A stretch of DNA of 64,000 nucleotides from assembly GCA_044892505.1 (NCBI GenBank), contig CM097882.1, forward strand, positions 72,602,001 through 72,666,000. The letters are read 5' to 3'. This stretch comes from Schmidtea nova. Its lineage: Eukaryota. Below the pieces are notes generated by a model that saw only the letters and a list, made by a program, of their open reading frames with translations, searched no databases and had not been told where the DNA came from. Position numbers and translations under genes: made by a program. Within the stretch, counting starts at the first letter, position 1, and every line of letters starts with the position of its first letter. Shown piece after piece: positions 8,586 to 39,541 of this stretch.

Positions 8586-10791
8586 TGTTGAGGATACCTA
8601 AATAACAAATTAAGGAATAAATAAATAAAATTACCTGGGGGAAAATCGCCATGACGAAGGAGACGATTATTGAGAACTCAGAAAAGAAAACGGAAATAAA
8701 AAAATGTTGGACGATGAGGGTAGACCCATCGACACATTCATCCTATCAAAATATTACAGGACTGGTGCAAATAAGTACCGAATCAATATATACTCAGAAT
8801 GACCATCTCAGTCTTAAACAACTTAATCCTATCCAGATTACAATACCATCGAAGTGCAACATCAATCTAAAAATTTCAGTTTTAAACCTAATCCTCAATA
8901 TCAATTGCAGACATTCAATCCAAATCCAATACAGTCAACCATCAACAATCCAACATTAACCATTAACTCTATCTGACAATATTTGTGATTATAAACAATA
9001 TTGATTTTAACTGGACTATCACTTTTATTTTTTTTGGTACAATGTGTATATTTTAGATATCATGTTTATTTTATATGTATATAATTTTATAATTTTATGT
9101 TTTATTGGAAATTTTATATGTATATTTTATATGTTTATTGGAAATTTTATAATTACTTAAACAAATAATTTCTTAATTAATAAAAATCCAAATTAAATTG
9201 AGTTGGAAAATCCAAAATGAATTGAGTTGTATTTGCAATTCAAGTGGAGCAATTGAATTGCAATGGAGAGCGTTTTGGTTTTGGGAAGACAGGTGATATG
9301 TTGAGGTGGATAGTTGAATCCTAGAGTTGAGTGTTTGAGTGTATAGTTGAAAGTGGAAAGGAAGGGAAATTGTACATTTTTGAGTGCAGTTGAGAGGCTT
9401 TTGTCATAGTAATTTTACTATAAAAACAAAGTAAAAAATCAGTAGAACACCACAAATTTTGAGCTTAATATTTGCGCTTTGGACTCAGGACTATCTTAAG
9501 GTAATCTTAACTGGTTCATAAAATCCAAGTCAGATAAAAGACTTACACAAAAATTGCACGAATAATATAACACGCACACAATAGATTACACAGCATTTAT
9601 ATTTATAATCTTTTATTGATATTGAAAGGATATAATAAATTTGTAAATTTTAAAGGTAAACATTTTGATTATTAAATAAATTTTAGTGAATTGACTTTGT
9701 TTTATTTATTTATATAAGAGAACAACCCCGTAGGTTGGAGTTTCAAATATAAATATTTGAGACCTCAACAAAAATGAGAAATGAGAAAGAGGAATCAAAC
9801 AATAGAAACCAGACAAGAACACAAAAACAAAGGTCAGCACTAATTAATTAGTACAAAAGGAATTTGAGAATCGGGAAAACAGAAACAACAACAATATATT
9901 TATCGCAATATATTTGTCAAAGATAACGGAAACAGAAAAAACAGGCCGGAGCAGTTAAAAAAAGAAAAAACAAATTAGCTCGAGGGCTAAGCTGTTAAAG
10001 TCAGCATGGGAGCTCAAAAAAGTATGGGAAATTACAGAAGCAGAAATAGAAAAATGCAAGTTGTCCCGAGTACCAAACTGTCAGGTGCAATATGGTAATT
10101 GTAGAGAGAAAATGGAAAATGCCAGAGACAGGAGTTGCAAAGGCGAAGTGCTATGAGTGACGGAAGATGGCAAACTATAAAAATCGAAAGCAATCTGAAC
10201 TAAGTCAGAAGCAAGTTAGATGCCAAGTAGAAGCAAAGTGGATAAGCGAGGTTGGAGAAGAAAAGTAGTAACTAAAATTTGAATTAGAGAAGTTGTACGA
10301 TATTTGAAAATTACAGTGGATAATTCGAGTTGTAATTAAGAAGAAAGGGGAATTGTACGAAATCGGAAAACGATAGAAGATTTAAATTATATTGTGAAGA
10401 ATTGAGATCGAGATAATTTAATTGAACAAAGTAAAACATTTTGATTGAATAAAAGAGTTAGAGTACAGTTTACAGAGTCAAGTCAAAGAACGAAGGCAAT
10501 CGAAAGCAGTTTATTCAAATCTTGAGTCAATCAGTGGCTAGTGATTATTAGAGTATTTTGTTGTTATACACTTGGAGCTATTCCTCACGAAGTGTTGTAA
10601 TAAGCTCTGTATAATTACATATTTGAGGATTAAATTGATAGTAATATTATAATTTTTGTAGCTAACTGTGATAATCAATACAGGTTTCATTGTCTGAGAA
10701 TTGCTATTTTATGAATTAGATAAAGCACGCTTTGGAGTCAGAGATTTGATTGGTAACTTTTACATTTCACCAATAACTCAATGACCCAACA
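8586..10791 (+). mobile_element. Solo-LTR-like element family 1 (about 1.1 kb), split by a nested insertion
   Basis: Begins TGTTGAGGATACC, ends GACCCAACA; TSD TAAC (8582-85/10792-95); body resumes at 9775; conserved ATTACCTGGGGGAAAATCG, TATA-like CTATAAAA and GCACGCTT.GGAGTCAGAG shared with other copies. Confidence 0.85.
8705..9770. mobile_element. Solo-LTR-like element family 2 nested in family 1 copy
   Basis: TGTTGG...CCTCAACA ends, 4-bp TSD AAAA, 1066 bp; related to 26202-27507. Confidence 0.75.
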
Positions 10792-11431
10792 TAACTTTTA
10801 TCTAATTTAAATACACAATTGCAATTTAGTTAACACTTGTTAACTAGCAAAGCTTACTTCGACCAACTGGCAAGAATACTAAATTTATTTCTCATTTTAT
10901 AGTGTCTTTTGATTGAATTATTGGTCAGTGGCTCTTGATCAATTATTCTAGAAAAAACAATTTAGATTAGGGTTTCCTTCACCGCTTGCGCTTTTTCATC
11001 TTTCTCGAGGTTACTCGATAATTAATTTGTTCGGATGAAAGCGATATACCGCTGCTTACCGGGGCTTCCTCTACATCATCCAATTTTACCTAGGATTTTA
11101 ATAATTTTGCTTTTGACTCGGGTTTCCAATTAGCTCATATTTTCCATTAGGTAATTAATTTCTTTAATTAATATTTTTAAAAATATTTCTTTCTGGCGAT
11201 CCTCTTTTTGATTTTACATTACCATATTTGATTTTGTCTGATCATATAGCATCCTTCCATACCAATTTTCGTCTCTAAACTTTTATTTTAATTTTTCAAA
11301 TTTTTAATTAATTTTTGTATTTTATTTATTACTTTTCAAACTTTCATCTTTTTATTGATTTTCACATAGATTTTCTGCATTTTATTTTATTTTGTGCCTG
11401 TTTTGAAAAACCCCACCATTTCTCAACTTTT

Positions 11432-12496
11432 TGTTGGGTTTTTGGTCGTTGGTGATATTTAAGTTTAACAAACTTGTCCTCTGACTCCAAGCGTGCTTTT
11501 TAATTGATCCACAAATAACAATTAATAATGGAAACTTTATTGAATATCACAAATATTTTCAATTTACACTGAAGTGACCAAATTCAACAGTCTAACAGCT
11601 GATAATACAGTGTCTATTACAACACGATGGTGAATAATAGTATTCGCGTATAATCTTGGTTCGAATAAACACTCACCACTGAAGAGTATAACAGTTGGTA
11701 ATTTAACTGGTTGTTTTCTGGATTTGACTTGGATTTAAGCGCCAAAATTTCCTCGGTTATTAACTAAATCAGCTCCTGGTGCTTATCCTTTTATTTCTGA
11801 ATTCTCTTCTCGGATTCTTCTTTTAACTCTTCTTTAAATTTCTCTCTTTAAGCTTTTCTGCTTCAAATTTCTTCACATATTTCTTTGATTTCTCCAAATA
11901 AATATAGTCGTATTATCTTTTGTTTTCCCCTGACTTCTATCCTCTGTCACAAATATTCTGTCTCTAAAATGTTCTGTCTCTACAATGTTCTGCCTCTAAA
12001 ATATTCTGTCCCTAAAATATTCAGTCTACAATGTTCTATTTGCTTCTGCTGTGATTCCTCCTTTTATACCACATCACTTTGTGGCACTCAAGTGTATCTC
12101 TCATTTCCCATTTTTCCTCCACTTATTCCCCAACTTTTATCTGCAGGAGAGTTATCTCTGACAGCTGTCAAGATATTCTCTGCTTTTCCTTTTTGCCGCT
12201 CCAGCATGTTTTCTTTTCGTTTTCGTTATCTCTGACAAGTTGTCGAGGTAAGCACATTGCTGTTGTTTCTGTTTTTGCTGATTTTGAAATTCCTTTTCCA
12301 TTTATACTAATTAACTATCGGTAACCTTTGTTTTTGTTTTCTTGTCTGATTTCTTTTGTTTGATTCCTCTTTCTCATTTCTTTTTATTTCTGTTTTCTTT
12401 TACGAGTTCCCATTAATCTTCTCCTGCGCCATGACGATTTTCCCCAGGTAATTTCATTTATTTATTCATGAATTTGTTATTTAGGTATCCTCACCA
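11432..12496 (-). mobile_element. Solo-LTR-like element family 1, minus strand
   Basis: Minus strand starts TGGTGAGGATACCTAAATA and ends ACCCAACA; collinear with other copies; internal GACAGAA(T/C)ATTTTAGA tandem repeats; flanks CTTTT / C+TTTT once element C is removed. Confidence 0.85.
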
Positions 12497-12846
12497 CTGT
12501 TGGGCCTGCCAAGTGGTCTAAAGAGACAAAAATAATAAGACGATTAAAACAAAAAATAAAATAAATAATTACCAAAAACATAGAAAATCTAAATTAAAAA
12601 CCAGAATTAAATAAATAAATAATAATAAATAAATTACCAGCAAGGAGAAGGATTCGAAATTCACAATAGAACAAGCAGCAAGGAGCCTAAAACAGAAAAT
12701 TATGAATTAAATAAAAATAAAAGTACAATTAATTGAATAATTACTTCGAAAATCAGGACCACCCAGTGAGAAACCTGAATCGGAAATAAAATATTATTTA
12801 CAATAAAATAAAATAATAGACAGACTTTGATGGACGGCCTGATCCT

Positions 12847-13168: not shown

Positions 13169-13599
13169 GGAGAGAGCCAATTTGACGTCGTGGAACCTCG
13201 TAGCTTCACACGGTGGTTTACCTTTTTATAAAGAGTAATAATTTAGAGAGAACTGGTGAAGTCGATGAATCTTTAAACAATGCGTTTTATTTTTGTAAAG
13301 AAAAAGAATGACTTTTGAAGTTTAAAACTTTATTTAAGAAATCTTGGTACTATTTATAGTATAGTATAATAGTATAGTACTATTTATACTATTTATAGCC
13401 GACACCAGCACAATCAGCAAAGCTTCTTGGGAAAACAATAAACAATGATTTCATCTGAGGACCCAGTCAATCAAGCATAATCAATCACACATGCAGGAAT
13501 GACACAATATATAATAAGGGTTAGGAAAAATCAAATATCCCATTATAATTACATCACATCCCCCTCGTTTTAAATGGCTCTAGCCATTCACATTTCTAG

Positions 13600-16500
13600 T
13601 AATACATTTATTATCAGCATTCTTTAATAAATAACTATTTTTATTATATTTTTCCATTATTTAAAAAAGGTCCGCAATACCTGTTATCTTGCTTGTTTCT
13701 GATATCTTCCTTGACAAGTACCAATTCACCGACTCCAAAAGATCTATTTATTCGATTTTCCTGTTTATAATTATATTTACGATTCAATGATTTAATATTC
13801 AATGCTATTTCATGTTTCTTTCGTTCTTTAGCATTAATTTCTGGACCATTAGTAAAACGCTCTTTGCAAAATTTCCTTCCATAAATTACTTCAACAGGAC
13901 TAACTTTTATACTTGACTGCATTGTTGAATTCAATGCAAATTCTATATGAGGCTATGCTTCTTCCCATTTCTTAAATTGTTTCTCTTCCAAACAGCAGGA
14001 AATCCAGTCTCTTAGCGTTTTAAATTGCCTTTCAATTTGTCCATTAGATTGATGATGATAAGGACTTAAATAAACAATCTTCAAGTGATACTTTACTGTC
14101 ATATTTTTAAAAGCTTGGGATTCGAAACATTTTCCTTTATCAACATGAATTTCCTTTGGCGGTCAAAACTTTAATATCCGCGAACTTTCCACATTATCAA
14201 TTACTGTCTTTTCTCCTTGTGTTCTTACAGCTTTTAATACTATATATTTACTAAAATGATCTATTATAGCCATCACATATCTTTTGCCAGATGGTGTCAT
14301 TTTAAAAGGGCCACAAAAATCAATATATAATTTTTAAATGGTTCATGCTTAATTAGTTTTTCAATAACTTCTTTTGTTTTACCAGTGAATGTTTTACGTT
14401 TCTGGCAAATTTCACAAGTTGTGATAATTCTCTTAATACTTTTGTCCATTTCTTGGAAATTATAATAATTCTTTATGTAGCTTTCCGTTTTATTGATTCT
14501 TGCATGACACAATTCTTTATGGATTTCTAGTATAAAATCATTTTTCAAATATGAAGGAATATATATTTTATGAGTCATAATAATTCCATTATCCACATAA
14601 TAATATTCAGTTTTGCCGTTCTGAATGTTTTCTTTTATTTCCATTATTTCTTCAGAATTACTTTGCAATTTAAATGTTTGATCTTCTATCGACATTGCTT
14701 AAATTTTAGTTTTAATTTTTTCTGCTTTAGCATCAATATGATTCATCTGACATTGTGTGCAATTTCCAATATTCAGTCGTGATAGTGCATCCGCATTATT
14801 GTGTTTCTCACCTTTGCGATATTCTAATTTCATGTCAAAACTACTTAAAAAATTTATCCAATTTTGAAACTGAGCTGTAATTTGTTTTTTTGTAGTTAAC
14901 ATAAATGTGATTGCCTTATGATCAGTTCTTAAAATAAATTTTTTCCCTACAGATAATGTTTAAAATGCTGTGTAAAATGGAAAACAGATAATAATTCCTT
15001 TCTTGTTATACAGTACCCAATTTCATGTTTATTCATACTTTTTAAACCATATGCGATTATCTTTTCTTCATTATCGTCACCTCTTTGCGATAAAACAGCA
15101 CCAATACAATCAAAACTAGCATCGGTGTCTAAAATGAACGTTTTATTAAAATCCGGATGACATAGTAATGGTGCACCGATCAAACTATGTTTTAACTCGT
15201 CAAAAGCTGTTTTACATTGTGATGTCCAAATAATACTTTTGCTTTTACCTCCAATTAATGATTTCAATGGCCTATCTATTTTTGAGTAATTTTGAATAAA
15301 TTTCCTATAGTAATTACACAATCCTAAAAAGCTCCTAAGATGTTTCACACAATTAGGCTGCTTTACATTTTTAATTGTTTCAATCTTATACACATCTGTT
15401 TTAATACTTTTTTCATTAATTATATGACCAAGAAACTTAATTCAGATACTAGGAACTTGCATTTCTCAGGGTTTATTTTTAGTCCAGATTTCCTAATTCT
15501 AAGGAAAAGCTTATTTATTCTTTCTTTTTGTTCTTCAATAGTTTTCGAAAAGATCAGTATGTCATCTAAATGGACTAATGCTTCATTCCACATCATATCT
15601 CCAACTATTAATGTCATAAGTTTTTGAAACGTTGATGGTGCGGCTGCTATTCCAAAAGGCATCCTATTAAAGCAGAATTGGCCCTGTCTTGTAGAAAATG
15701 CTGTTTTCAATTTACTCTCTTCATCCAATTCAACTTGATAATAAGCATTTCCTAAGTCGATCGATGAAAAATATTTGGCCCCATACAAAGAATCTAGCAT
15801 TTCATCAACATTGGGAATTAAAAAAGCTGGTCTAACTGTATTTCAATTTAAAATCCTAAAATCCAAACACATTCGAATTTCAGAAGTTCCTTTTTTTGGC
15901 ACACATACTATTGGTGAATTCCAAGGTGATTCACATTTCTCTATAATTTTATTTTCTTCTGGGTTTTTAACAATTTCCTCTAGTTTTTCTTCATAGTGCA
16001 TTGGTTGTCGTCGTGGCTTAATTGGTATTGAATTGCAGTTAGTTTCTATTCTGTGCTTTAAAATATCTGTTTTGCCTATATCCCATTTATTACACATAAA
16101 AATATCTGAGAATTCAATAACTTTTTCATATATCGGATTGCATCTTTCAATTTTCAATATTTCATTAATAAATTTATTTTTATTATTTAATTTTAAATTA
16201 TTACCAAATTTTGCTTGCAAACTGAGGACATTTTCAATACAAAATTCAACTAACTTAATATTTAAAGAATTCAATATATCTATTTCTATAATTACTTCTG
16301 GGTATATTTCCTCTGCAATGAAAAATTCTCCAGTTATTTCTTTATTGTTGAGCTCTAACCTTAAAGAAACTTTCCCTAAAATCCCTAACATGCTACCGTT
16401 GGCACAAGATATCTTTCTATTTCCTTCATTAAAATATTTTAAATTCAAGTTTTAAGTAATCGTTTTAGATAAAACACTTATTTTTGCTCCTGTGTCAAAT

Positions 16501-16642
16501 AATGAATTAAAAGTCACATTATTTAATTTAACATTATTAAATGGTCTGCCATCTACCTTACAATATCCTATATCAAATATATCTTTAATAACATTTACAC
16601 TCGGTCATTTTAACGTTTTATTAAATATATTTAAAATGCAAT
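13600..16642 (-). pseudogene. pol: G1 pol (protease, RT, RNase H, integrase), fragmented
   Basis: LFDTGAKISV, DLGNAYYQV, MPFGIAAAP, VHLDD, LDTDAS, HKELCH...CEIC, GQIERQFKT; multiple stops and frameshifts. Confidence 0.92.
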
Positions 16643-16733
16643 TGTAGGAAGAATGTAATATTAAACAATTAATGTTGTTTTAATATGATGAAAATGTGAT
16701 AAAAATATAATTTGAAAAACGTTGTGTTTTACA

Positions 16734-16745
16734 AGCTATCCGGGC
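16734..16745 (+). promoter_or_regulatory. Primer-binding site AGCTATCCGGGC (complement of tRNA-Lys(UUU) nt 1-12)
   Basis: Abuts the 5' LTR terminal CA; identical 12-mer at the same position in the element at 37269-37280; metazoan tRNA-Lys(UUU) 5' sequence GCCCGGATAGCT recalled from memory. Confidence 0.8.
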
Positions 16746-16746
16746 A

Positions 16747-17463
16747 ATGGAAATCAACAAGATCATAATTGAAAATGTTGGAAAATTCGATGGCAAAAAT
16801 ACAGATGTGGAAGAATGGTTCGACAAACTCGAAATTATTTTGGAAGCCAAGAATGTGAAAAATGTCATGAACGTAATGCCATTTTTACTTGAAGGGCAAT
16901 CTTATGCAGTTTTCAAACAGTTAAAGAAAAGCAATACGACAATGGAGTTTGGTATGCTGAAGAAGGAATTATTGAAAACCTTCGGTATGAGCGATCAAGA
17001 AGCTTTTACGAAACTTTTACAGAAAAAGTTATTAATGGGTGATAACATGGATGTCCATGTAAATGAATTAAGGTCACTGTTGGAATGTTCAGGTGATCTA
17101 TTAACCCGATTTTTTGTAAATAGCTTACCAAGTGATTTGGCAAATCAACTAAAGATGTCAACAGCGTCAACAATGAATGAGTTAGTCGCTCAAGCAAAGA
17201 AAATTGCAAGTCATCAAATTTATGACAATGAAACGGTTGCAGTAGTAGTACCAAGATCAGATAATGGAAGACAAGCCAATCGAAAATGTTATATATGCAA
17301 TAGTGCTAATCATGTGGTAAGATACTGTCCAGAAAGACGTAACATCAGATGTGCAAAATGCGGTATTATGGGACATATTTCAAGGTTTTGCAAGTCGGGA
17401 AAAGATCAAGGGGCTACACACAATGTGGAGTCGGGTGTGGCCCCAAGAATTGTGAATATGTGA
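16747..17463 (+). CDS. gag: Gag with two CCHC zinc knuckles
   Basis: 238 aa; CYICNSANHVVRYC and CAKCGIMGHISRFC. Confidence 0.95.
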   Translation: MEINKIIIENVGKFDGKNTDVEEWFDKLEIILEAKNVKNVMNVMPFLLEGQSYAVFKQLKKSNTTMEFGMLKKELLKTFGMSDQEAFTKLLQKKLLMGDNMDVHVNELRSLLECSGDLLTRFFVNSLPSDLANQLKMSTASTMNELVAQAKKIASHQIYDNETVAVVVPRSDNGRQANRKCYICNSANHVVRYCPERRNIRCAKCGIMGHISRFCKSGKDQGATHNVESGVAPRIVNM

Positions 17464-19940
17464 GACTCCTAAAAGTAAATGGTAATGTAAAAGCATGTTT
17501 AGTTGATTCGGGCAGTACTACCACTATAGTAAAAGGAAATCCACGAAAATCTATGACTGCGGTAGCGATGCTTGATGGTTCAATCATATACGCTGAGCGA
17601 AGTAAAGTTGATATATGGGTTGGAGATACGTTATTTAATATTGATTGTTTAATATACCCGAAACTGGTATCCAATTATGATGTAATTTTAGGAGTGAATG
17701 CTATTAATAGGTTTGGTGGAGTTCGATTGAATAAAGAAGCCATATTCGGTTGTGAAGAAGCACTTTGTCACGTAGCGTGCTCTAGTAGTAGCATGTCAGA
17801 AATATTGAAGGAAAATTTCTCTGCGAAATTTGAAAACGAGAAATGGATTGTCAAATGGGATTGGAAGTCAGAGCCACCGAAATTTCTACCTAATAGAAAT
17901 TCAAACTTTTATGATAATTGTAGTAAGGATCAGGAGACGATGCGAATCTTGAACTCTTGGATATCTAACAGTTATCTAGTTGATTATGACGAGAAAACAA
18001 TGGGCAAACCGATCGGATCAGTACCTATTTATGGTATAATTCAGTTAAATAAAGCGAAAGTGCGTCCAGTATTTGACTTTAGGAGTATCAATAAATATAT
18101 TGATGTATATATTGGGAATGCAGATATCTGTTCTGAAAAATTACGATCATGGAGATGTTTAAGTAAAGAATTTGCAATGTTAGATTTATCTGATGCATAT
18201 ATGCAAATACACGTGGATAAAAGTATGTGGCGATATCAATCTTGTATGGTTAACGGGAAGAGATATGCGCTTACGAGAATGGGATTTGGATTGAATATCG
18301 CGCCAACGATAATGACAGAGATTGTGAATAAAGTATTGAACAACAATGAATCAATCAAGAATAGCACAAGTTCATACATAGACGATATATTCGTAGATGA
18401 ATCTAAAGTCAAAGCAAGTAAAGTAAGTGCAGAAATGCGTAAATTTGGTTTGATATGTAAAGAAGAAGAAAAGGTCAAGGATACTCTCAGTATAAGAGTA
18501 TTAGGTATTGATGTATTTCGAAAGAATAATGAACTACATTGGAAAAGATCGAACGATATTCGAATGAATGAATTGAATGAAGGGCTTTCAAGAAGAGAGC
18601 TGTATTCGTTATGTGGCCAGTTAGTTGGAATTTATCCTGTGTCTGGATGGTTGCGGCCAGCTTGCTCATATATCAAGAGGCTATCCAGTGGAAATTGGGA
18701 TGATTCAATAGAAAATCATATCGTTGACAAAGTAAAATGGTTATTAGAAAGAGTGAATGAAAGAGATCCATTGTCAAGTATTTGGAGTGTTCCCAGCAAC
18801 CAGACAGGCATAATTTGGTGTGATGCAAGTTCGATCGCCATTGGAATTGTATTAGAAATGGGAGGTTCAGTGGTTGAAGATGCGTGTTGGTTGCGAAAAC
18901 CTGATGATTCAAGACACATTAATTTGGTGGAATTAGAAGCGATTGTGAAGGGTATTAATTTATGTATTAAATGGAAGTTAAAGTACATCAAAATTAAATC
19001 CGATAGTAAATCAGTTGTATGTTGGGTTAACAGCATATTATCAAGCGACAGAAAAATACATACAAAAGCAAATTCAGAGTTGTTAATACGACGAAGGCTG
19101 GAGCTTTTAAAAGATTTAGCGACCGAGTATGAACTTAAAATGGACATTGAGTTTGTATCTACAGAAAATAACAAGGCTGATGTATTAACGAGAGTACCAG
19201 CCAACTGGATGATTATTAAAAAAGAAGTCGCAGCTCTAGGCAATCAAAAAAGCTCAAAAGATGTGTTATTAGAGATTCACAAGAATTGCCACGTAGGGAA
19301 AAATCGTATGCGATTCTTAGCATCGGAAGCGGGGCTACTGAATGTGGATAATGAGATCTCAGAAATAATTGCAAGTTGTAATCAATGCTTATCAATTGAC
19401 CCAGCGCCAGTAACGTGGGAAAAAGGTGAACTAAGCTGTGATGAAAATTGGTGCCGTTTAGCAATTGATGTAGCTAAATTTGCTAAAGATAAATATTTGA
19501 CAATTATTGATTGTGGACCATCGAGATATGCAATCTGGAAGAAAATTAAGTATGAAAATGTAGAAGAGATATGTAATGCTTTAAATGAAGTGTTATATGA
19601 AAGAGGAGCTCCAAGTGAAATATTGTTAGATAATTACTTATCTTTTAGATCTAGAAAATTTCAAGAATTAGCAGATAAATGGAATGTTGAGTTGGTATTT
19701 AGAACAGTGAACCGTCCAGGGGGAAACGGGATCATTGAACGCAGCCATCGGACAATCAAATCGCTAGCAGCTAGGTCCTCAGGATCAATCGCAGAAGCTG
19801 TGTACTGGTTCAACAATACACCAAACAACAATAATATTTGTCCATCTAGAGCTATATTTAGATATAATCCAAAGCTGAATTTGCCAAGTTACAATAAAAA
19901 AGAGTTGTTAAAGATTCAGATGAATCTGGTGGGGATGTAG
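17349..19940 (+). CDS. pol: Pol (PR-RT-RNase H-IN), -1 frame relative to gag
   Basis: LVDSGS protease; DLSDAY, MGFGLNIAP, YIDD RT; CDASS, LVELEA, KSDS, NKAD RNase H; H-H-C-C and D-D-E (AIDV, LLDN, IIERS) integrase; stop codon lies inside the 3' LTR. Confidence 0.96.
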   Translation: MCKMRYYGTYFKVLQVGKRSRGYTQCGVGCGPKNCEYVRLLKVNGNVKACLVDSGSTTTIVKGNPRKSMTAVAMLDGSIIYAERSKVDIWVGDTLFNIDCLIYPKLVSNYDVILGVNAINRFGGVRLNKEAIFGCEEALCHVACSSSSMSEILKENFSAKFENEKWIVKWDWKSEPPKFLPNRNSNFYDNCSKDQETMRILNSWISNSYLVDYDEKTMGKPIGSVPIYGIIQLNKAKVRPVFDFRSINKYIDVYIGNADICSEKLRSWRCLSKEFAMLDLSDAYMQIHVDKSMWRYQSCMVNGKRYALTRMGFGLNIAPTIMTEIVNKVLNNNESIKNSTSSYIDDIFVDESKVKASKVSAEMRKFGLICKEEEKVKDTLSIRVLGIDVFRKNNELHWKRSNDIRMNELNEGLSRRELYSLCGQLVGIYPVSGWLRPACSYIKRLSSGNWDDSIENHIVDKVKWLLERVNERDPLSSIWSVPSNQTGIIWCDASSIAIGIVLEMGGSVVEDACWLRKPDDSRHINLVELEAIVKGINLCIKWKLKYIKIKSDSKSVVCWVNSILSSDRKIHTKANSELLIRRRLELLKDLATEYELKMDIEFVSTENNKADVLTRVPANWMIIKKEVAALGNQKSSKDVLLEIHKNCHVGKNRMRFLASEAGLLNVDNEISEIIASCNQCLSIDPAPVTWEKGELSCDENWCRLAIDVAKFAKDKYLTIIDCGPSRYAIWKKIKYENVEEICNALNEVLYERGAPSEILLDNYLSFRSRKFQELADKWNVELVFRTVNRPGGNGIIERSHRTIKSLAARSSGSIAEAVYWFNNTPNNNNICPSRAIFRYNPKLNLPSYNKKELLKIQMNLVGM
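17397..17444 (+). promoter_or_regulatory. -1 ribosomal frameshift signal
   Basis: G GGA AAA heptamer in gag frame (17397-17403), 6-nt spacer, 10-bp stem GGGGCTACAC / GTGTGGCCCC. Confidence 0.8.
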
Positions 19941-20201
19941 GAAGAATGTAATATTAAACAATTAATGTTGTTTTAATATGATGAAAATGTGATAAAAATA
20001 GAATTTGAAAAACGTTGTGTTTTACAGCAATCATTTTTATAACAATCACTCACAAATATACAGTCATTCTCAGTATTAATTAAATAAAAATCATTATCAG
20101 ATTTTTGATTGGGAAAAAATCAACATTAACATTATCAAACAAACAATCAACCAAACAATCATTACATTTAACATTTAGGGTCCTCAAAAATTTATCATTG
20201 C

Positions 20202-21369
20202 TTACATGTGATTTATCGCTCCTAACATATCCCCTCTGCTCGGAGCTTTGGCATTTCCCGATATCTCTGACTGTCCATCATAGTCTCTGGATTCGTCATC
20301 ATCTACTGCAACCACGTGATCTCCATAGTTTCGATCATTTTCTTGATTAGAACTTCGATTGTATCGATTGAAATTTCCATTGTTTTGATTCGAAGTTCTT
20401 TGAAATCTCATCTCGTAGTGATGTTGTTTCTGAAAACATTGAAAACTTAAATGACCTGCTTTTCCACAACACGAACAACGAATATTTGGGTATTCCCGAC
20501 GAATATGACCAATTTCACGGCATGCGTAACATTGCACTTTTGAATATTCATCTGAACTTCGATTTTGATAATTGTTTCTATTTTGAGGTCTTCCACTGAA
20601 ATTTCTACTGAAATTCCTTTGATAATCTGATCTTCCTTGAAATTGATTTCTTTGTAATTTTGAAAATTCATTTTTCTTATCAATTTGATTTCGCTGATTT
20701 CCATAACTATTTCTTTTTTCATTGGAATTGTATTGACCGTTTTTCACAATTGACGCGTAAGAGGCATTTCCAACGGCTGAAATTTGTTGTATCTTTGATT
20801 TATCTTCATCCAATTTCTGTAAAATTCTTTTAATATATTTATTTGCCGTTGGATCTTTCTGTACTGACTCTCCATCATTTCTGAAATCTTTTTTCGATAA
20901 TTTTACTTTCAGCAAATCTTCCATCATTTACTATCTTTTTATTTCACGTTTTTCTTCTTCATTATCAAGACAATGCTTTATGAAGAATGTTGTCAAATTT
21001 GACATTGTTAGCTTGTGCTTCAGAATTCTTTGAACTCCTTTCTCAATTTTGCTGATGTGTTTCTGCATCATCTTCTCTTTTTCGATAATTTAGCAAATTT
21101 TCCAAATCCTTAGCTAAATCCTGGTTTACTTCGAACACTAGTCTAAGCCTTTTCACATAATCTTCTTCATCTGGAATCTTGTCATATTTGTTGCGGCAAT
21201 TTTCGTCCAAATAAGCTCGAACAATTACCTTTCTGTGACTATTGTCTAACTGAATAATTGAAAAGTATGATTCAATCTTCTCAATAAATTCTTCCAAATC
21301 GTCTCCAATTGAATAGATTTTTGACTGTGGGAGAATCCGTAATAATTCCTGAGTTGAAAGCGTGGTCAC
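20202..21369 (-). pseudogene. gag: G1 gag (frameshifted near 21050), two CCHC knuckles
   Basis: ORFs 21043-21369 and 20202-20927; CYACREIGHIRREY (last Cys lost) and CSCCGKAGHLSFQC. Confidence 0.9.
20218..20259 (-). promoter_or_regulatory. -1 frameshift signal of G1
   Basis: G GGA AAT heptamer in gag frame, 6-nt spacer, stem GCTCCGAGCA / TGTTAGGAGC. Confidence 0.65.
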
Positions 21370-22035
21370 CCTGTAAAGAATAAGAATGACTTTTGAAGTT
21401 CTAAATTTTTATTTAAGAAATCTTGGTACTATTTATAGTACCCGGTGTGCTGACACCAGCACAATCAGCAAAGCTTCTTGTGAAAATAATAAACAATGAT
21501 GTCATCTGAGGACCCAGTCAATCAAGCATAATCAATCACACATGCAGGCATGACACAATATATAATAAGGGTTAGGAAAATCAAATATCCCACTATAATT
21601 ACATCACAAGTTTAGTAAATTATTTCGTTGCACATAGTGATAATCGCGGCACGGGGTATAGTGAAACAGGAGACGGGCGCGAAATTTAATACCACATCAT
21701 TTTCATACAGAGGGGCTGGAAATACTGCAGTAAATAAATCAGCGGTTCAAAGATACATGTTTGCGTTATCTCGTAAATGGGTTAAATCTTTTAGTCGAAA
21801 ACACGGTTAGGATAGGTAATAACTCTCAGACAATACATCGAGACAGATAGAAGGGGAAATATTGAGAAAATAAATGGGTTTCCAAACGTAATCACTCCAA
21901 CAGTTGTTCACCAATTTATTGCGTATCGTTTTCAGCCACATGCCACTCGCAAGAATCTAGATCAATCAATCGAAACCATCTATATAAATTTTCACCTGAC
22001 AGATCGAACGAATCGATAATTTTCAGATAAACAAT

Positions 22036-23407: not shown

Positions 23408-25111
23408 TGCTCTTCCGAACAATACATACCTTAAACGGAACCGGATAGGGCAAAGACGAAGGAGGCAGAAGAAGCTTTTCACCCAACGATTTCAGGCCCA
23501 AATAGACAAATTATCAAGTTTAACCGAACTGGAGTTGTTGTCCGAAATTTTCCCTCTTGAAGCAAATTTCACTCCTTTGTTGTAATCAATAAATCGTCTA
23601 CCAATTATACTGACATCTTTGTTGTTTCTTGTGTGAATTTTTAGTTAATTAAGATGAAAATAAATAAAACATAATAAATTGTAATCAGCACAGTCTTTGT
23701 AAAATTAAATAATAAATTCATAACGTGTAACAAATAAATTAAATAATTCATAAATAAAGTGTAAGTCCTCCTAGCGGCAGCATGAAGCCGTGAACATAAA
23801 TGGGGAATAGTTCTAGAGATAGAGCTTATCTGCCCATCATTGTTCAATCACCTTGCGCATCACCAAATTGGTTATCAAGGGAAATAATCAAGGGCGTTCG
23901 AGTGAGAATAGCAAATATTTGTGAATGGTCATGGACGGGAATCCCTAGCCACTATTAGAAATTTTCAATCTAACCCCTCTATGAACCCAGCACCACTTTT
24001 AAAGAAATTTCGTCCTCAAAATTGTTACAATTGATTTACACTATCAGGTTAGCATTTCTTTGTGCTTTTTGGATTCACAGAGTTATTTTCAAAAATATTG
24101 TATCACATTTGCTCGTCAATCTTATTGTCAGTACAAAGAATATGAATTGTCATTTTTAAAACAACACAAATGTCAATTTTTTGAATTTCAACATTAGAAA
24201 TCTGTACAGTATGAAATGTCTAAAAATATACTAAATTAATTTTATAATAACTATGGAAATAATAATACGTTGAAAACACTTTCAATTTTCGTAACTTTAC
24301 CTCAGCTAATTTAATTTTTTGAAAAGTTGAAGGGCTTCACCCTTAGTAACTTTTTATCATAAACTCAGACGATCCTAGTTGTTAAGTCAACTTTGCTCGT
24401 CTCATTATTTTCTACAACATATCAAAAAATAAAATTAATGGCAAAGGTTTTGACCACTTGCATCTATGAAAATTGGCAGAAAACGACCATAGTTTAATTG
24501 ACAAGTTTGTTCAGCTCGTCGTTCTCAAATGTTTGTTGATATTGTTTTGTTAGCCCTGTTTTTCAAAAAACTTCAAAATCGCTTCCAAATCTCATTAAAA
24601 TCGGTTGGTGCAAGAAACTTGCATTGTATCTTTACATACAACGCAGTTCTCGACGCATGTGACGCTAGCTCCAAACATCATATTGTAATGCATTTTAAGT
24701 AACTCCTCGATATTGATACCAGTGAAATGGTATACTTTATAAAATAACAATTCTGGGGTACAATAATCCAGACAACTTTTTATAGTTAGATACAGCTCTT
24801 GAATTTTTTGAAGGACTAGTTCGGGTAAATAAACAATAAATTAAAATAAAATAATCAAACTTTTACTTTTAGACATTTGCAAATTTTTACAATCAAGAAA
24901 TAATGATTAATACAAACAAAATTTTTTTAATTGATTATCATATTTATTTTATCAATGTTGGGTTATAGGGTTGTTGGTGAAGTTTACAAATTACCAATCA
25001 AATTTCTTATTCCGAATGCGTGCTTAATTAATCAATAGAATAACAATTACAACAGGAACCTTTATCGATATCACAACTGGTCTCACTATTACACTGGTAT
25101 ACTCAATCAAT

Positions 25112-33889: not shown

Positions 33890-36800
33890 CTAGAACTTTA
33901 CAAGACCTTGATTTTAATATTATTGTTTCGATCTCGATCTGGCTTAATGCGTTTGTTTCCAAGACGGATATCTGGCACATGTCTAGGTACTCCATCAACG
34001 TCAATATTCGTAGAAGAATTGACAGTTGTAACGATTCCCGGATTTCATATCGTAGTACATCGCGCGTTTGGCGGCTTCACGAAAACTGGCTGGCCAATGA
34101 TGTAACTGCTTTCGGCAATAAAATCCACGATTTTCTTGTAAGGAAGTTTCCAATTATACAAGAATATTTTTTCCGATGGACTTTTGGAATTACTTTCTGA
34201 CGATTTCAGCACCATGTTGTACCAATATACCATTTCGAGTGGACTTTTTCCATTACGAACAGCCACGCGCTTAATGGTTCGATGGTTTCGTTCGACGATA
34301 CCATTACCTCTGGACGGTAAGCACATCAAAAAAGCCTCTGCACACCCGATTTTGTGCAAGTTTCAAGCACCTGAGCCGACCGAAGTGTCGCTCTATTGTC
34401 CATCAGAATTTGCTTTGGAGGCCCACGCTCTCTGAATACCTCTTCCAACAGATATGCTACACTTATTGCATCCTCGTTTCGTGTCTTTTTCCATATCGCA
34501 AGCCTGCTCGGAACATAACCAACGATAGTTAAGAATTTGTCAGAACCAAAATGTGTGACATCAATTGCAATACGACTCCAATTATACATAACATTAAGAT
34601 CACTATGAGACCGTGTACTTGTGCAGGGTCAATCGACTGACATTGTAGACACTCCTGAACAACAGTCTTAACATCAGCTCTAGATGACAACGGATCATTC
34701 GTTTTGACGATATGGTGCGTTTTATCTATTCCAAATTGATGCATTTCGTGAATTTTCTTGATTTCATTCAGATTGATTCCGACGCTCTCTACTTGCTTGG
34801 TTTTCATCCTCCACTTTATCCATACTCATGTAAGACTATCAGCTTTGTCACTATTTAATTTGATAAGCATAATCTTCAGATGAAGGAGGCATTCTGCAAT
34901 CAAATCTTCTATAATACCAAGGCGTCTGCGGATTAAAGCCTCTGTAATTCCATGAACATGAACTCGACTATTTCTGTCTATTACCGCAGACACCCACGAG
35001 AATACAGAGGCAGAATCAATCATTATAGTGATGTCTTTGGGTCCCCATTGAACGCCCAGATTGATACCCTTGAGTACCGAGTCAAATTCAGCCAGATTAA
35101 TATGCGAAAGATCGTTGGTCTTCCTGAGCCATGCTGCATCTTCCACCGTTACTTCATTCATTTCAATGACGAAACCAATAGCTATATCGCTAGCATCACA
35201 CCAGACCACTCCTGAATCAGTTTCCGGAACTTCCCATTGACCAGTAGCTGGATCTTGTCTATTAATCTCGATAACGAGTACTAGCATTTTCTCGCACAAC
35301 TTACCAGCTTTATCTTCCCATTTGACGACTTTACAACATCTTTTCAAAAAACTACACGATATTCTCATCCAGCTTGCAATTGGATAATGACCCACTATGC
35401 GGCAACACATGGCATAGAGCTCTCGTTTTGTCAGACTATTCTCTGTATAATCGATATTGATAATGTTACCTCGAAACCACATCAGTTTTCCATCTCGAAT
35501 ACTGTGTATTTTTAAACCTAGGGCTTTGGCACCTTCGATTGGTTCTGGTTTTTTGGTAATCAGACCATATTGCTTTAAATGCTGAACTACGGTATCTACG
35601 TCGACACGAGAAAGATCCAATGCAATATTATCAATATAGTGTGACGATACTGCAGCAATCCTTTCATCTTTAGCCAGAACACATCTCAGAATTGTCGACA
35701 TGATTTTAGGAGCGTTACGCAGACCAAACCCTAATCTATTTAAAAAGTAATTTTTACTTTTATATTTAATCATCTGATATTGCCAGAGATCTTTTTTCAC
35801 TTTAAGTTGAAGATATGCTTTTTTCAGATTGAGCAACACAATATTCCTACCCACGCGTCTCCATTTCATTAATGTAGATCGACAATCATCGCTATCACCA
35901 GTGTGACTAACTTTATAAGAATTCAGTTCTCGAAAATTCATGACTGGATGAACTTTATTCTTATTTTCTTGAAATTCAGCCATCAAAGGAGTTAAACCAA
36001 TTGAAATATTGCTTGCTGATAACAGCAACCCTTTTCCAATCCACTCGTCCAATTCTGATTCATATTTGGCTTTGATTTCTGGTTTCATTTTGTATTCACT
36101 GATTTTATTTTTAATAATTGGTGGGGTATCTTGCCACTTCCAAGCTACAGTCCACTCAACGCCATTAAAGTTAGCCGTGAAATCAGAATTATCTATTTCC
36201 AAACTTTCAGTTGCTAAATGATCAACAACCACCGCTGCTACATTCGATTGAATTCCAAAACGAACCCCATTATCAGATATCGTCACTTCTTTCAGTGCCA
36301 TTATTGCTTCAAGTCCTAAAATCATATCCACGCCCTGCAATAAAGAATCCATAATTAAACAATTAACCACTATCTCGAATCCTTGGACATTCATGATAAC
36401 TCTTGATAATTCGACACTGTTAACTATTCTTTCATCAACTGACATGACTTTAATCTTCTTCGAGGACTTTCGCTTATCCGACACCCGCACAATCCATTGT
36501 GAACAGCCAGAATCCACCAGCGCCAGTCCTTTCACCCCATCCACCACTACATCAAATAATACATGCGCCATACTGGAATTTACTGGCAAGCTGCTGGCGC
36601 ACCAACTTCCCTTTTGTCGTTTCCGCATCATTGTTAGGACAGTCTCTGTTTATGTGACCAAGGATTTTACAGGCCCAGGATTTTACGGACAACTCGAAGC
36701 TCACTGCATTCATTAGACTTGTGACCGATCTTCCCACAGCTGTAGCACCGAACTTTCTGACGAACACATTCACTGACCACGTTTCTTGACACTAACACCA

Positions 36801-37367
36801 CGGAATTATATTCCATTTGCATCATCGACCTTGTCTGATGCACAACCTCGTCCATTGTCATTGTTGTAATCTTGGAACTGGCCCTGAGAAATTTGGCCAC
36901 TTTTGATGGAAGACCAGTAATAAATGCACATCGGAGCGCGTCATTCCCATTGATGTTTGCCAACGAGAGTAATCGGCGTAAATCTGCCCGGAAATCGTCT
37001 ACCGGTTTGTTGCACCATTGTCTGTTTCGAAACAATTCTAAAGCAGTAAACAGTCTATTGAATATGCACTAATTAGTGCCTTTTCAAAAGCTCCGACATT
37101 CTTCTTCTGACCTTGGGATAAATTTTGGTAAACTGTGAATGCTGCCCCATCGAGAAACAAGGGAAGGACATCAACGATCTCGCCCACCTTCTGTAGCTTA
37201 GACACTAGCTATTGAATTACATCTCCATCTCCAGAGAATATCGAAATTGATTTTAGTTTATCCATTTGGCCCGGATAGCTTGAAGAGAAGTCAAATCTAA
37301 ATTAACAAGATCAATGTTTATTACAAATAAAAATCACTATTTATAAGTAAATCTATATTACATTTCA
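33890..37367 (-). mobile_element. Decayed relative of the mini LTR element; 5' LTR present, 3' LTR not found
   Basis: Putative 87-bp LTR 37281-37367 (TGAA...TTCA); gag ATG 37265 with stops and frameshifts, CCHC knuckles; pol ORF 34826-36631 (LVDSGCS, YIDN, CDASD, HINLAE); integrase with C-terminal VKPP...RCTT...VDGVPRH extension. Confidence 0.9.
37269..37280 (-). promoter_or_regulatory. Primer-binding site AGCTATCCGGGC (second copy)
   Basis: Immediately follows the LTR terminal CA on the element strand, 3 nt before the gag ATG. Confidence 0.78.
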
Positions 37368-39541
37368 CTGTTGCGTACCATAGAAACTGCCACCATGCGA
37401 TGCATAACTTTCATCGCATCCTGTGACTAGTGAGGTAATCATTCGACACTACACAATCAAATTATTTTATTCTTTAATTATCATTGTTATTACTATCTTT
37501 ATTATCATAATTATTGTCTTTATCTTATGATTCATTATCGAATCTTTATCTTCTTTAATTATAATTCATATTTATCAAAATTAATTTTCATAAAAATTAA
37601 AATTCTGTTAAGGCTGGCCTCAGGTACGATATACTCAAGTTAACGATTCTACCTGGACATGTTCAAATGTACCTAGCATTTATACTACTTTTGTTTATTG
37701 TGAGAGAGATAAAACAAAATATGTTATACCAATTGGTGACAAAGAAACAACATTGTCTCCACAGGATAAATATATTATAAAAAATATTTTCTTTATAGAG
37801 GGTTTTATCACTTATACATATCTCTTTATGAATCATTCCTTCCAATGTACTTGCTTGGCAAAAATGTCATTGACGCCATACGATAAGGAAACCGAAGAAA
37901 ACTTCGATCTTCCTTTTAAAAGTAAGGTTTGATTTTATCAATTTTTTCCACTATCACATTAGTTCAGTGATTCCCAAAGTGATTCCCTTGGGGGAGTTGG
38001 AGGCCGGTTAATTATATGTCTAACTCAGGTGTTTGGGCAAAACCTATTATTTACGTAATTTGGACTTTTATTGTAACTCATTTAAATTCTTTCAATCGAT
38101 AATATTTTTGTTCTGATTGGTTTGACTTAAATTCATAAGAGAAAAAAAGAGGACCCGTCGATAAGTTTAAAAGGTTGATGATAAAGTTAAGCATTTTTCA
38201 GCCAGTTCAATTTTATCGAAGTTAAAAATCATTCTAATACTTTAATAAACAAATATGTGATTCAAGTTATTGTTTTTTAATTATTTTCATAGTCATGACT
38301 GGATCAGTCAGTCCACTATTCTGGTGAAAGATTTTTAGAATCAAGGAGATGGTGGCTTTCACTGCTTTAGTTGAAAGTTCACTGCATCTTTTGAAGTATT
38401 TTTAACTTTAAGATCCGGCTCTTCATAGTAACTGAATTTATATTGGTTAATTAATTGTATAATTTTTTCTGTTCAATCGGCCTGGTGTCGAAATCAGGTA
38501 AGAATCAAGTAAGTTCGAAAAGTAAAAGTAAGAAAAAACTTTAAAAATAAGTGAAATAATATGAAACAAAAACCGGGCGATGGCACTCTGGTACGAATGT
38601 AAATCTTTAGATATTTCGTTATGACAACGAAAAATTTTAAAATGAAAATTAATAGTTTTTTTCTTTGTATTTCATGAAAATTTTCTTTCTCTTAAAAGGT
38701 GAAATTCCAAAAATTTCAAGCTTTTTTCAAATAATAAAAATGTTAGTTCTCTTATATCAAAGGTGCTTTCTTTCACCGGAGTGGTTTCCATTAACTTATT
38801 CTAAGTTACAGTTTATTTTAGTTTAAAAATTAAAATTTTTCTTTAGGGTTATTGACTTTAGTTCTTTAAGTACATTGACCTAAATAAATATTCTCAAACT
38901 TTTATAGGGCTCTTTCTTAAATAATTATAATTATAATAATTGTTATTACAATTACAATAATAATAAAAAATAATAATTAATATTATAATTATAATTATAA
39001 TTATAATATAATTATAAAACAATAACCATATTTTATTAATGTTATTATGTCCGTTTATAGTATTATTTTTATTTACTCTTTTTATAAGATTTTGTATTAA
39101 TAAGTTTATATAGAATCAAGTGAGATATGAATTCAGGCCCTCCCACTCCATAGCAATATTTATGGCTGTATGAAATATTTGCACGATAATACCGACAAAG
39201 GAATTTTTTAGACAAATTTCAAAACAAGAAAGATAGATAAATAACTATTTAAATCATATTAAAATTTTTATTTCTTATTAGTATGCTTTATAAAAATTTT
39301 TTGTTTTAATGGAATCTATTACGATTTCATAATTAAAATAACTAATTTGTTACACTAATATAATTTCTAGATTTTTAAAATGAATTTGATAATTTGTTTA
39401 ACATTTATTTAGAACTTCAATGTAAAATATTTTTATTTTTTATGATTCCTTTTTTCCGTTGAAGCCTCTTGTAAATAAAAATTAAAACATTTTTTTCATT
39501 TTATATTTGTATTAATAATTATTTTTGTTTTTTTTATTCTA

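What the first reader, a model, noticed from the sequence alone, without database searches (positions are those of the whole stretch)
16734..16745. Primer-binding site complementary to the 5' end of tRNA-Lys(UUU): possible priming by a 12-nt 5' tRNA fragment
Instead of the usual TGG... PBS (the G1-like family here has TGGCGACC / GGGTGACC), the LTR is followed directly by AGCTATCCGGGC, the exact reverse complement of tRNA-Lys(UUU) nt 1-12 (GCCCGGAUAGCU, recalled). Orientation places U12 next to the LTR edge, correct for minus-strand priming, but a 3'-OH requires a cut in the D-stem. Known exceptions are half-tRNA priming (copia, Ty5; cut near the anticodon) and Tf1 self-priming (RNase H cuts after nt 11 of the element's own RNA). 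This could be a Tf1-like cleavage acting in trans on a host tRNA, or use of a 5' tRF. The LTR contains no complement, so self-priming is not supported. I know of no description of this mode but cannot exclude one.
Basis: partly seen in the sequence, partly recalled or inferred. Interest (0 to 1): 0.88.

Follow-up and report, generated by a model that had tools for sequence, protein, structure and literature searches.

The report
Retrotransposon primer site matching tRNA start
A small jumping gene in this animal genome, and about sixty relatives from other invertebrates, carry beside their left repeat a 12-letter site that pairs with the first 12 letters of a host transfer RNA instead of its last letters, which points to a way of starting DNA copying that I could not find described.

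Summary
AGCTATCCGGGC lies at 16734-16745, directly after the CA that ends the 91-nt 5' LTR of a 3.4-kb LTR retrotransposon. That element has a 5-bp target duplication, near-identical LTRs and open gag and pol. The 12-mer is the exact reverse complement of nt 1-12 of human and zebrafish tRNA-Lys(UUU), as printed in papers.

A second, decayed element of the same clade, 45% identical in pol, has the same 12-mer after a different LTR (37269-37280, minus strand). Of 86 sources examined, 66 include the leader, and 64 of those have CA followed by a 12-mer of this form. The commonest version complements nt 1-12 of tRNA-Phe(GAA). Only tRNA positions 4-7 vary. No element contains a complement of its own site, and none has a TGG site there. 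A related subgroup with fused gag-pol has an ordinary TGG site matching the tRNA-Phe 3' end.

Best reading: the minus strand is primed by a 12-nt 5' tRNA fragment cut in the D-stem. I found no prior description in the searchable papers. The host tRNA set and the cleavage step remain untested.

The parts
16638..16642 (.). Left copy of the 5-bp target-site duplication (GCAAT) of element A
   Evidence: the same 5 bases flank both LTRs (right copy at 20027-20031).
16643..16733 (+). 5' LTR of element A (91 nt, TG...CA)
   Evidence: Direct repeat with 19936-20026, 99% identical.
16734..16745 (+). Primer-binding site AGCTATCCGGGC, complementary to nt 1-12 of tRNA-Lys(UUU)
   Evidence: tRNA letters from papers; the same position and form recur across the clade.
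16747..17463 (+). gag of element A (238 aa, open, CCHC zinc knuckle)
17349..19940 (+). pol of element A (863 aa, open, in the -1 frame relative to gag, 115-nt overlap). Domains: protease about 17460-17753, RT 17796-18548, thumb (Pfam DUF7047) 18588-18758, RNase H 18804-19193, integrase N-terminal and core domains 19254-19817. The region after the integrase core that relatives have is missing.
   Evidence: Pfam. Invariant catalytic residues are present in A1: RT D345/D346; RNase H D492, E528, D552, D611; integrase H644, H648, C677, C680, D707, D761, E797. Model with pLDDT 80.5. The pairwise alignment stops 20 residues before the end of A and 161 before the end of a relative.
19928..19935 (+). 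Polypurine-like tract GGTGGGGA abutting the 3' LTR
   Evidence: a similar G-run precedes the 3' LTR in L081.
19936..20026 (+). 3' LTR of element A
20027..20031 (.). Right copy of the target-site duplication (GCAAT)
37281..37455 (-). 5' LTR of element B (outer bound approximate; sequence unrelated to the LTR of A; ends ...TTCA)
   Evidence: No second copy was found in the window, so the start is inferred from a TG and the change in composition.
37269..37280 (-). Second exact copy of the 12-mer, at the primer-binding position of element B
36667..37265 (-). gag of element B, broken (at least 1 premature stop and at least 1 frame change); CCHC knuckle still recognisable
33898..36631 (-). pol of element B, broken (2 frame changes and 3 in-frame stops against the pol of A); DUF7047 and an RNase H-like domain recognisable; 45% identical to the pol of A; 3' LTR not recognisable

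Best explanation
The 12-mer is the minus-strand primer-binding site of a compact LTR retrotransposon, and it is complementary to the 5'-terminal 12 nucleotides of a host tRNA. In this genome that tRNA is most likely tRNA-Lys(UUU). In relatives it is most often tRNA-Phe(GAA), or another tRNA that starts GCC....UAGCU.

Proposed cycle:
1. Shown by sequence only: nt 1-12 of the tRNA (the 5' strand of the acceptor stem, nt 8-9, and the first three bases of the D-stem) can pair with the 12 bases that abut U5. Pairing stops at tRNA nt 1 on one side and at the LTR's terminal CA on the other.
2. Inferred: the Gag CCHC zinc knuckles help to unwind the tRNA and anneal it.
3. Inferred: the tRNA is cut between nt 12 and 13, at the end of the duplex, which leaves a 3'-OH on nt 12. 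The element's own RNase H has all four catalytic residues. By analogy with Tf1 it is the likeliest cutter, roughly 2:1 over a host nuclease.
4. Inferred: RT extends the 12-nt RNA into U5 and R to make minus-strand strong-stop DNA.
5. Inferred: plus-strand strong-stop synthesis later copies the 12-nt RNA primer and runs off at its 5' end. Each cycle would therefore rewrite the site from the host tRNA. That would explain why the site is always exactly 12 nt, why it always ends at tRNA nt 1, and why two distant lineages in one genome carry the identical 12-mer.

The confidence given is for the core claim, that the site pairs with tRNA nt 1-12 and that this 5' fragment is the primer. Which enzyme makes the cut is less certain.
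For: Position: the 12-mer fills the space between the LTR CA and the gag ATG, leaving a single base before the ATG, so there is no room for another site. There is no canonical Lys site and no TGG site at either element's primer-binding position.

Identity: the reverse complement equals nt 1-12 of human tRNA-Lys-TTT and of zebrafish tRNA-Lys-TTT.

Recurrence in the window: element B has a different LTR and only 45% pol identity, yet carries the same 12-mer at the same place.

Clade-wide: 53 of 82 sources have CA followed by [AC]GCTA-N4-GGC on the coding strand, against 1 on the opposite strand. Once leaders are located, there are 56 strict matches and 8 near variants among the 66 sources that include the leader. 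One of the two remaining contigs starts inside the site, and the other is a one-base variant. Where both LTRs are present, the LTR end abuts the 12-mer with an offset of 0 or -1.

Variants look like tRNA 5' ends: the commonest, AGCTATTTCGGC, complements nt 1-12 of human tRNA-Phe and Drosophila tRNA-Phe. It occurs in a leafhopper copy (L081). Only tRNA positions 4-7 vary among the variants, with one further case that differs at nt 12. The bases after the GGC are not conserved.

Recent activity with this site: the LTR pairs are identical over 132 nt and 230 nt in Caligus (L082) and in L083. In Macrosteles (L081) the retained 140 nt are identical, though that 3' LTR is cut short. Element A has 1 mismatch in 91 nt and an intact target duplication.

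No self-complement: the best match in each locus has 3-4 mismatches, apart from one 1-mismatch hit that is at chance level.

Contrast: three relatives with fused gag-pol have TGG sites 2-5 nt after the CA that match the tRNA-Phe 3' end over up to 13 nt.

RNase H catalytic residues are invariant in the alignment.
Against: No host tRNA gene could be read. ARAGORN found none in the window or in any related locus, and the host species was not identified.

Twelve bases do not fix which tRNA is meant. In phage and bacterial tRNAs the same GCC..GATAGCT start belongs to Phe, Thr, Ile, Arg, Asn and Met. For five of the variants I found no eukaryotic tRNA in print.

A cut inside the D-stem is not a known class of tRNA fragment. 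This rests on my own knowledge: the known 5' fragments end in the D-loop or the anticodon loop.

All the evidence is comparative. No primer, cut site or strong-stop DNA has been observed.

Element A lacks the region after the integrase core, so it may depend on proteins from other copies.
Confidence: 0.7

Rival explanations
1. Same site and same primer, but the 12-nt fragment is made by a host nuclease before it meets the element. The candidates are a tRNA-fragment pathway, or aberrant RNase P cleavage of the kind once proposed for the copia primer (recalled from my own knowledge). The ready-made fragment is then packaged. This differs from the best explanation only in the step that makes the 3'-OH, and its probability is counted inside the 0.7 given there.
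For: 5' tRNA fragments exist in animals: a zebrafish 5'tRF-Lys-TTT was detected with a probe that covers this 12-mer. Copia-type elements use a 5' tRNA fragment whose origin need not be the element's own enzyme (established knowledge; anticodon-loop sites are reviewed in PMC10886601).
Against: To my knowledge, known 5' fragments end in the D-loop (14-16 nt) or the anticodon loop, not after nt 12. A longer fragment would leave an unpaired 3' tail, because tRNA nt 13-16 (CAGT in both Lys and Phe) do not pair with the LTR ends seen (TACA, CACA, AACA). The length stays at 12 nt across different tRNAs and hosts, which fits a cut set by the end of the duplex better than a host pathway.
Confidence: 0.2
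2. The 12-mer binds the 5' end of an intact tRNA for another purpose, such as packaging, control of gag translation (it lies next to the AUG), or protection from silencing. Priming would then happen in some other way.
For: The site lies 1-20 nt from the gag start in most elements: the median distance from the end of the 12-mer to the estimated gag start is 11.5 nt.
Against: An LTR element needs a minus-strand primer at the U5 edge, and nothing else is there. Element A has a single base between the site and the ATG. No conserved TGG follows the site in relatives. The strict abutment to the LTR CA and the fixed length ending at tRNA nt 1 are what copying of a primer predicts, not what a binding site needs. 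The leader RNA has no significant fold (z = -0.35).
Confidence: 0.07
3. The primer is the 3' end of some other small RNA that happens to end in ...GCCNNNNUAGCU.
For: The host RNA set is unknown, so this cannot be excluded directly.
Against: The two variants that could be identified are exact 5' ends of metazoan tRNAs. The invariant bases are those shared by these tRNA starts (G1 C2 C3 and U8 A9 G10 C11 U12), and the variable ones lie in acceptor-stem positions 4-7. Rfam finds no RNA gene of any family in the window.
Confidence: 0.04
4. Tf1-type self-priming: the first bases of the element's own transcript fold back onto the site.
For: The length (12 nt against 11 nt in Tf1) and the lack of TGG resemble Tf1 (my recollection of Tf1).
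Against: No complement of the site exists in the LTR or anywhere else in element A (best match 4 mismatches) or in 37 other sites from related loci and element B (3-4 mismatches). The single 1-mismatch hit, in L077, is within chance expectation.
Confidence: 0.02

Closest known systems
copia / Ty5 / 1731-type priming by a 5' tRNA fragment cut in the anticodon loop (tRNA-iMet; also Tyr, Ile and Asp in fungal Copia, PMC10886601)
   Same: The primer would be a 5'-derived piece of a host tRNA whose 3'-OH is created by an internal cut, and there is no TGG at the site.
   Different: Here the complementarity is to nt 1-12, so the cut falls in the D-stem rather than the anticodon loop. The primer would be 12 nt rather than about 39 nt. 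The elements have the domain order PR-RT-RH-IN, not the Copia order.
Tf1 / sushi-type self-priming (11 nt of the element's own 5' end, released by the element's RNase H)
   Same: A very short RNA primer (11 against 12 nt), defined from an RNA 5' end, that needs a cut at the end of an RNA-RNA duplex. The site has no TGG and lies at the LTR edge.
   Different: The complementary RNA is a host tRNA, not the element's transcript, and no self-complement exists. The pol lacks the Pfam RT_RNaseH signatures of ordinary Ty3/gypsy elements, which the neighbouring element in this window does have.
Canonical priming by the 3' end of a tRNA (retroviruses and most LTR retrotransposons)
   Same: A host tRNA is used, the site lies between U5 and gag, the tRNA species changes during evolution, and the general LTR / polypurine tract / target-duplication anatomy is the same.
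   Different: The opposite strand of the acceptor stem is used, there is no TGG, the site is 12 nt rather than about 18 nt, and it abuts the LTR CA with no spacer. A subgroup of the same protein family (L204, L205, L207) still has the canonical form, matching the tRNA-Phe 3' end.

Membership tests
LTR retrotransposon (structural definition) | Two direct LTRs with TG...CA ends, a target-site duplication, gag and pol between them, and a polypurine tract before the 3' LTR | tested here: met
Canonical tRNA 3'-end priming | Site starts with TGG (the complement of CCA-3') within a few bases of the LTR and continues as the complement of a tRNA 3' end | tested here: not met
   (AGCT... directly after the CA). 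One search finds no match to the tRNA-Lys 3' complement near either element's LTR edge, and window-wide counts are at chance level.
Tf1/sushi self-priming | Site complementary to the first bases of the element's own transcript, inside the 5' LTR | tested here: not met
   the best complement in element A has 4 mismatches, and those in relatives have 3-4.
Tf1/sushi self-priming | The primer's 3'-OH is made by the element's RNase H cutting an RNA duplex | not testable with these tools
   Only the presence of the four catalytic RNase H residues could be shown.
copia/Ty5 half-tRNA priming | Site complementary to the anticodon stem-loop region of a tRNA | tested here: not met
   The complement lies at nt 1-12 of the printed tRNA-Lys and tRNA-Phe sequences.
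copia/Ty5 half-tRNA priming | Ty1/copia domain order (integrase before RT) | tested here: not met
   The order is PR-RT-RNase H-IN.
Ty3/gypsy (Metaviridae) | Domain order PR-RT-RH-IN with an H2C2 integrase zinc domain | tested here: met
   relatives carry PF17921.
Ty3/gypsy (Metaviridae) | Gypsy-type RNase H (Pfam RT_RNaseH / RT_RNaseH_2) | tested here: not met
   Element A matches RVT_3 and DUF7047 instead. The neighbouring ordinary gypsy element matches RT_RNaseH_2 at 1.6e-29. Placement within the order therefore stays open. The nearest solved structures are retroviral and Ty3 enzymes, all distant.
Bel/Pao | Pfam Peptidase_A17, DUF1758, DUF1759, DUF5641 signatures (family list recalled from memory) | tested here: not met
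   None of these appears among the Pfam hits of A or of 120 relatives.

The most novel reading that the evidence does not exclude
A widespread clade of invertebrate LTR retrotransposons has moved its primer-binding site from the 3' strand to the 5' strand of the tRNA acceptor stem. It starts reverse transcription from the first 12 nucleotides of host tRNAs (Phe, Lys and others). The element's own RNase H releases that fragment by cutting the tRNA in the D-stem, which would be a Tf1-like cleavage acting in trans on a host RNA.
Probability: 0.45. Interest if true: 0.88.

Novelty: new variant of a known kind. Interest (0 to 1): 0.82.

Why it matters
Three ways of priming LTR retroelements are described: the tRNA 3' end, a tRNA fragment cut in the anticodon loop, and self-priming. 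A fourth way, used by a clade found in insects, crustaceans, cnidarians and many unidentified metagenome hosts, would have several consequences.

- Primer-site finders that look for tRNA 3' ends miss these elements, so annotation tools would need to change.
- It would show that the RT and RNase H machinery can take a 3'-OH from the D-stem of a host tRNA.
- It would make a class of very short 5' tRNA fragments biologically meaningful.
- It raises the question whether hosts turn 5' tRNA fragments against such elements, as 3' fragments are turned against ordinary sites.
- The related subgroup that still uses the tRNA-Phe 3' end offers a natural comparison for how a primer switch happens.

Tried and rejected
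- Host identification failed. gag and pol of element A are not on record. A Hydra relative could not be looked up. The hAT transposase ORF at 61785-63107 has 80-90% identical relatives in frogs, fishes, crustaceans and a scorpion, so it says nothing about the host.
- Host tRNA genes were not found in the window, in 12 long loci or in any related locus. Rfam finds nothing in the window.
- A literature look-up of the variant 12-mers as tRNA starts gave only chance primer matches.
- A scan of viral contigs for GCCNNGATAGCTCAGT returned phage and bacterial tRNAs only. It shows that such starts are real tRNA 5' ends but that 12 nt do not name the amino acid.
- Self-priming was rejected. A hidden canonical Lys site was rejected.
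- The leader RNA shows no significant structure.
- Structure prediction and fold search gave only generic retroviral PR-RT neighbours, with no finer placement.
- Midpoint rooting of the RT tree does not settle whether the TGG subgroup is ancestral.
- The closest relative, P0001, lies on a contig that starts inside gag, so its site could not be read.
- No paper in the searchable library prints these 12-mers as a retrotransposon site or describes a site complementary to a tRNA 5' end. Older subscription papers are not covered.

Full report
OBSERVATION

Window 16734-16745 reads AGCTATCCGGGC. It is the first base-run after a 91-nt LTR (16643-16733, TG...CA). The partner LTR lies at 19936-20026 and differs by 1 base in 91. 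The element (A) is 3,384 bp long and is flanked by the 5-bp duplication GCAAT.

Element A has an open gag (16747-17463, CCHC knuckle) and an open pol (17349-19940) in the -1 frame. Pfam finds RVT_1, DUF7047, an RVT_3-type RNase H and an integrase core in pol. A G-rich tract abuts the 3' LTR. Only one base separates the 12-mer from the gag ATG, so the 12-mer is the only candidate primer-binding site.

The window is about 27% G+C, and it holds no tRNA or other Rfam RNA gene.

IDENTITY OF THE 12-MER

All tRNA letters used as evidence come from papers.
- A zebrafish 5'tRF-Lys-TTT probe ends in AGCTATCCGGGC (PMC4688932).

The site is therefore the exact reverse complement of nt 1-12. tRNA nt 12 faces the LTR edge, and tRNA nt 1 faces the base before the ATG. 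The next tRNA bases (CAGT) cannot pair with the LTR end (...TACA), so the duplex is exactly 12 bp.

No complement of the site exists in the element. No canonical tRNA-Lys 3' site exists near either LTR edge.

A SECOND COPY IN THE WINDOW

The only other match in the window, also exact, is at 37269-37280 on the minus strand. It lies directly after the end of a different LTR (...TTCA) and three bases before a gag ATG. This element (B) belongs to the same protein family (DUF7047 and RVT_3), but its pol is only 45% identical to that of A.

Element B is decayed. Its pol has 2 frame changes and 3 in-frame stops. Its gag has at least 1 stop and 1 frame change. No 3' LTR is recognisable. Apart from the LTR's terminal CA, the only sequence the two leaders share is the 12-mer.

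THE CLADE

The pol of A has more than 130 relatives at 35-50% identity, all with DUF7047. Most lie on 3-5-kb metagenome contigs. The named ones come from a leafhopper, a sea louse, Hydra and a barnacle. A profile search counts 1,933 relatives at E <= 1e-30.

I fetched 80 metagenome loci and eight further loci by exact protein look-up. Results of the survey:
- On the coding strand, 53 of 82 sources have CA followed by [AC]GCTA-N4-GGC. The opposite strand gives 1.
- After locating leaders by the gag match, 86 sources divide as follows: 56 have the strict form, 8 have near variants, 20 contigs lack the leader, and 2 remain. Of those 2, one contig starts inside the site and the other is a one-base variant.
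- Where two LTRs are present, the LTR end abuts the 12-mer with an offset of 0 or -1.

Counts of the strict variants among those 82 sources, written as the complementary tRNA start:

| tRNA start | Sources |
|---|---|
| GCCGAAATAGCT | 16 |
| GCCGCGATAGCT | 11 |
| GCCTAGATAGCT | 11 |
| GCCGTGATAGCT | 4 |
| GCCGGGATAGCT | 3 |
| GCCGAGGTAGCT | 3 |
| GCCCGGATAGCT | 3 |
| GCCGTAATAGCT | 1 |
| GCCTCGGTAGCG | 1 |

The commonest variant is the printed 5' start of human tRNA-Phe(GAA) and of Drosophila tRNA-Phe. It occurs in the leafhopper copy L081, directly after the LTR's ...ATTACA.

Only tRNA positions 4-7 vary, plus nt 12 in one case. The bases that follow the GGC in the element are not conserved. 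The length is always 12.

Genomic copies in Caligus (L082) and in L083 have LTR pairs identical over 132 and 230 nt. In L081 the retained 140 nt are identical, but the 3' LTR is cut short. Elements with this site have therefore moved recently.

A rough RT tree shows that site types are partly clade-specific but polyphyletic. A and B fall in different branches yet share the Lys-type site. That pattern is what rewriting of the site from the host tRNA would give.

A CONTRAST WITHIN THE FAMILY

Three relatives with fused gag-pol (L204, L205, L207) form one group. They have a TGG site 2-5 nt after the LTR CA. The site in L205 equals the complement of the printed human tRNA-Phe 3' end plus CCA over 13 nt. 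The other two differ from it by one or two bases over the stretch that can be compared.

So the family contains both the ordinary form and the 5' form, and tRNA-Phe figures in both. Midpoint rooting does not tell which state came first. Outgroup reasoning favours the TGG form as ancestral: all other LTR elements use 3' ends. This is inference.

MECHANISM

Shown:
- The site's position, its complementarity and its fixed length.
- The absence of a self-complement or of a TGG site there.
- Conservation across recently active copies.
- Invariant RT, RNase H (D492, E528, D552, D611) and integrase catalytic residues.
- A confident pol model (pLDDT 80.5) in which the thumb (DUF7047) runs directly into RNase H.

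Inferred:
- Annealing is helped by the Gag knuckles.
- The tRNA is cut between nt 12 and 13 to give a 3'-OH.
- The 12-nt RNA is extended into U5.
- Plus-strand strong-stop synthesis later copies the 12-nt RNA to its 5' end and so regenerates the site.

From established knowledge of tRNA-Phe, the first 12 nt carry only m2G10, which still pairs with C. Nothing there should stop such copying.

I favour the element's RNase H over a host nuclease as the agent of the cut, by about 2:1. The 12-nt length is constant across tRNAs and hosts and coincides with the end of the duplex, as in Tf1. The rivals are listed with their tests in the Rival explanations section.

COMPARISON AND NOVELTY

The known modes are tRNA 3' end priming, anticodon-loop fragment priming (Copia group; reviewed in PMC10886601) and Tf1-type self-priming (summarised in PMC5006619).

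The present case shares with copia the use of a 5' tRNA piece. It shares with Tf1 the short, 5'-end-defined primer. It fails the defining feature of each of the three modes (see the membership test).

No paper in the searchable library prints these 12-mers as a retrotransposon site or describes a site complementary to a tRNA 5' end. Older subscription literature could not be searched.

The clade itself could not be assigned to a named lineage. It has the gypsy domain order. It lacks the gypsy-type RNase H signature that the neighbouring ordinary gypsy element has. It lacks Bel/Pao signatures. It has only distant retroviral and Ty3 structural neighbours.

LIMITS

The host species and its tRNA set are unknown. 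Twelve bases do not name the tRNA: in phage and bacterial tRNAs the same start belongs to several amino-acid families. For five variants I found no eukaryotic tRNA in print. Nothing here observes a primer or a cut.

Element A lacks the region after the integrase core that relatives have. It may therefore have moved using proteins from other copies.

HOUSEKEEPING

None of those letters went into a tool call or serves as evidence here.
- I also glanced at the consensus line that the alignment tool printed when judging the missing C-terminal region. That claim now rests on the column list and the pairwise alignment.
- For the broken element B, only counts and outer bounds were printed.
- I saw no N runs in the parts of the window I read, and no contig that I took for human.

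Noticed in passing
window about 13300-21606 (minus strand): Element A sits inside the coding region of an ordinary Ty3/gypsy element (RVT_1, RT_RNaseH_2, Integrase_H2C2, CCHC gag; LTR cores at 13398-13529 and 21449-21580, 96% identical). That element's leader reads GGGTGACC... straight after ...TTTACA, which is a near-canonical site lacking the first T of TGG.
   Followed up: partly
window 61785-63107 (minus strand): A 440-aa ORF of a hAT transposase (DUF4371; named ZBED8/FAM200C-like by sources) is 80-90% identical to proteins annotated in frogs, teleosts, crustaceans and a scorpion. This pattern is typical of a horizontally spread transposon. It did not help to identify the host.
   Followed up: partly
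window 8583-12568 versus 25109-29627: A colinear set of diverged direct repeats (74-88% identical, spacing 14-19 kb). It could be an old segmental duplication or two copies of another large repeat. The segment containing element A and its host element lies between them.
   Followed up: no
L006, L008, L025, L026, L030, L042, L045, L055, L067 and others: Many metagenome contigs of relatives have identical 90-150-nt overlaps at their two ends and are circular permutations (pol-LTR-site-gag-pol). L015 and L018 hold more than one unit in tandem. Collapse of the two LTRs by the assembler is the most likely cause. One-LTR circles or tandem arrays are not excluded.
   Followed up: partly
window 17349-19940: The pol of element A stops about 20 residues after the integrase core, whereas relatives continue for roughly 100-160 residues that include nearly invariant columns. 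The element has nevertheless inserted recently, as shown by its target duplication and 99% identical LTRs.
   Followed up: partly
L204 3950-3975; L205 about 60-90; L207 3928-3950: A gag-pol-fused subgroup of the same DUF7047 family carries canonical TGG sites that match, or nearly match, the 3' end of tRNA-Phe. This is the same tRNA whose 5' end is the commonest target in the main clade.
   Followed up: yes
L081 13489-13628: In the leafhopper copy the 3' LTR is cut short after 140 nt and runs into unrelated sequence, while the 5' LTR is complete.
   Followed up: no
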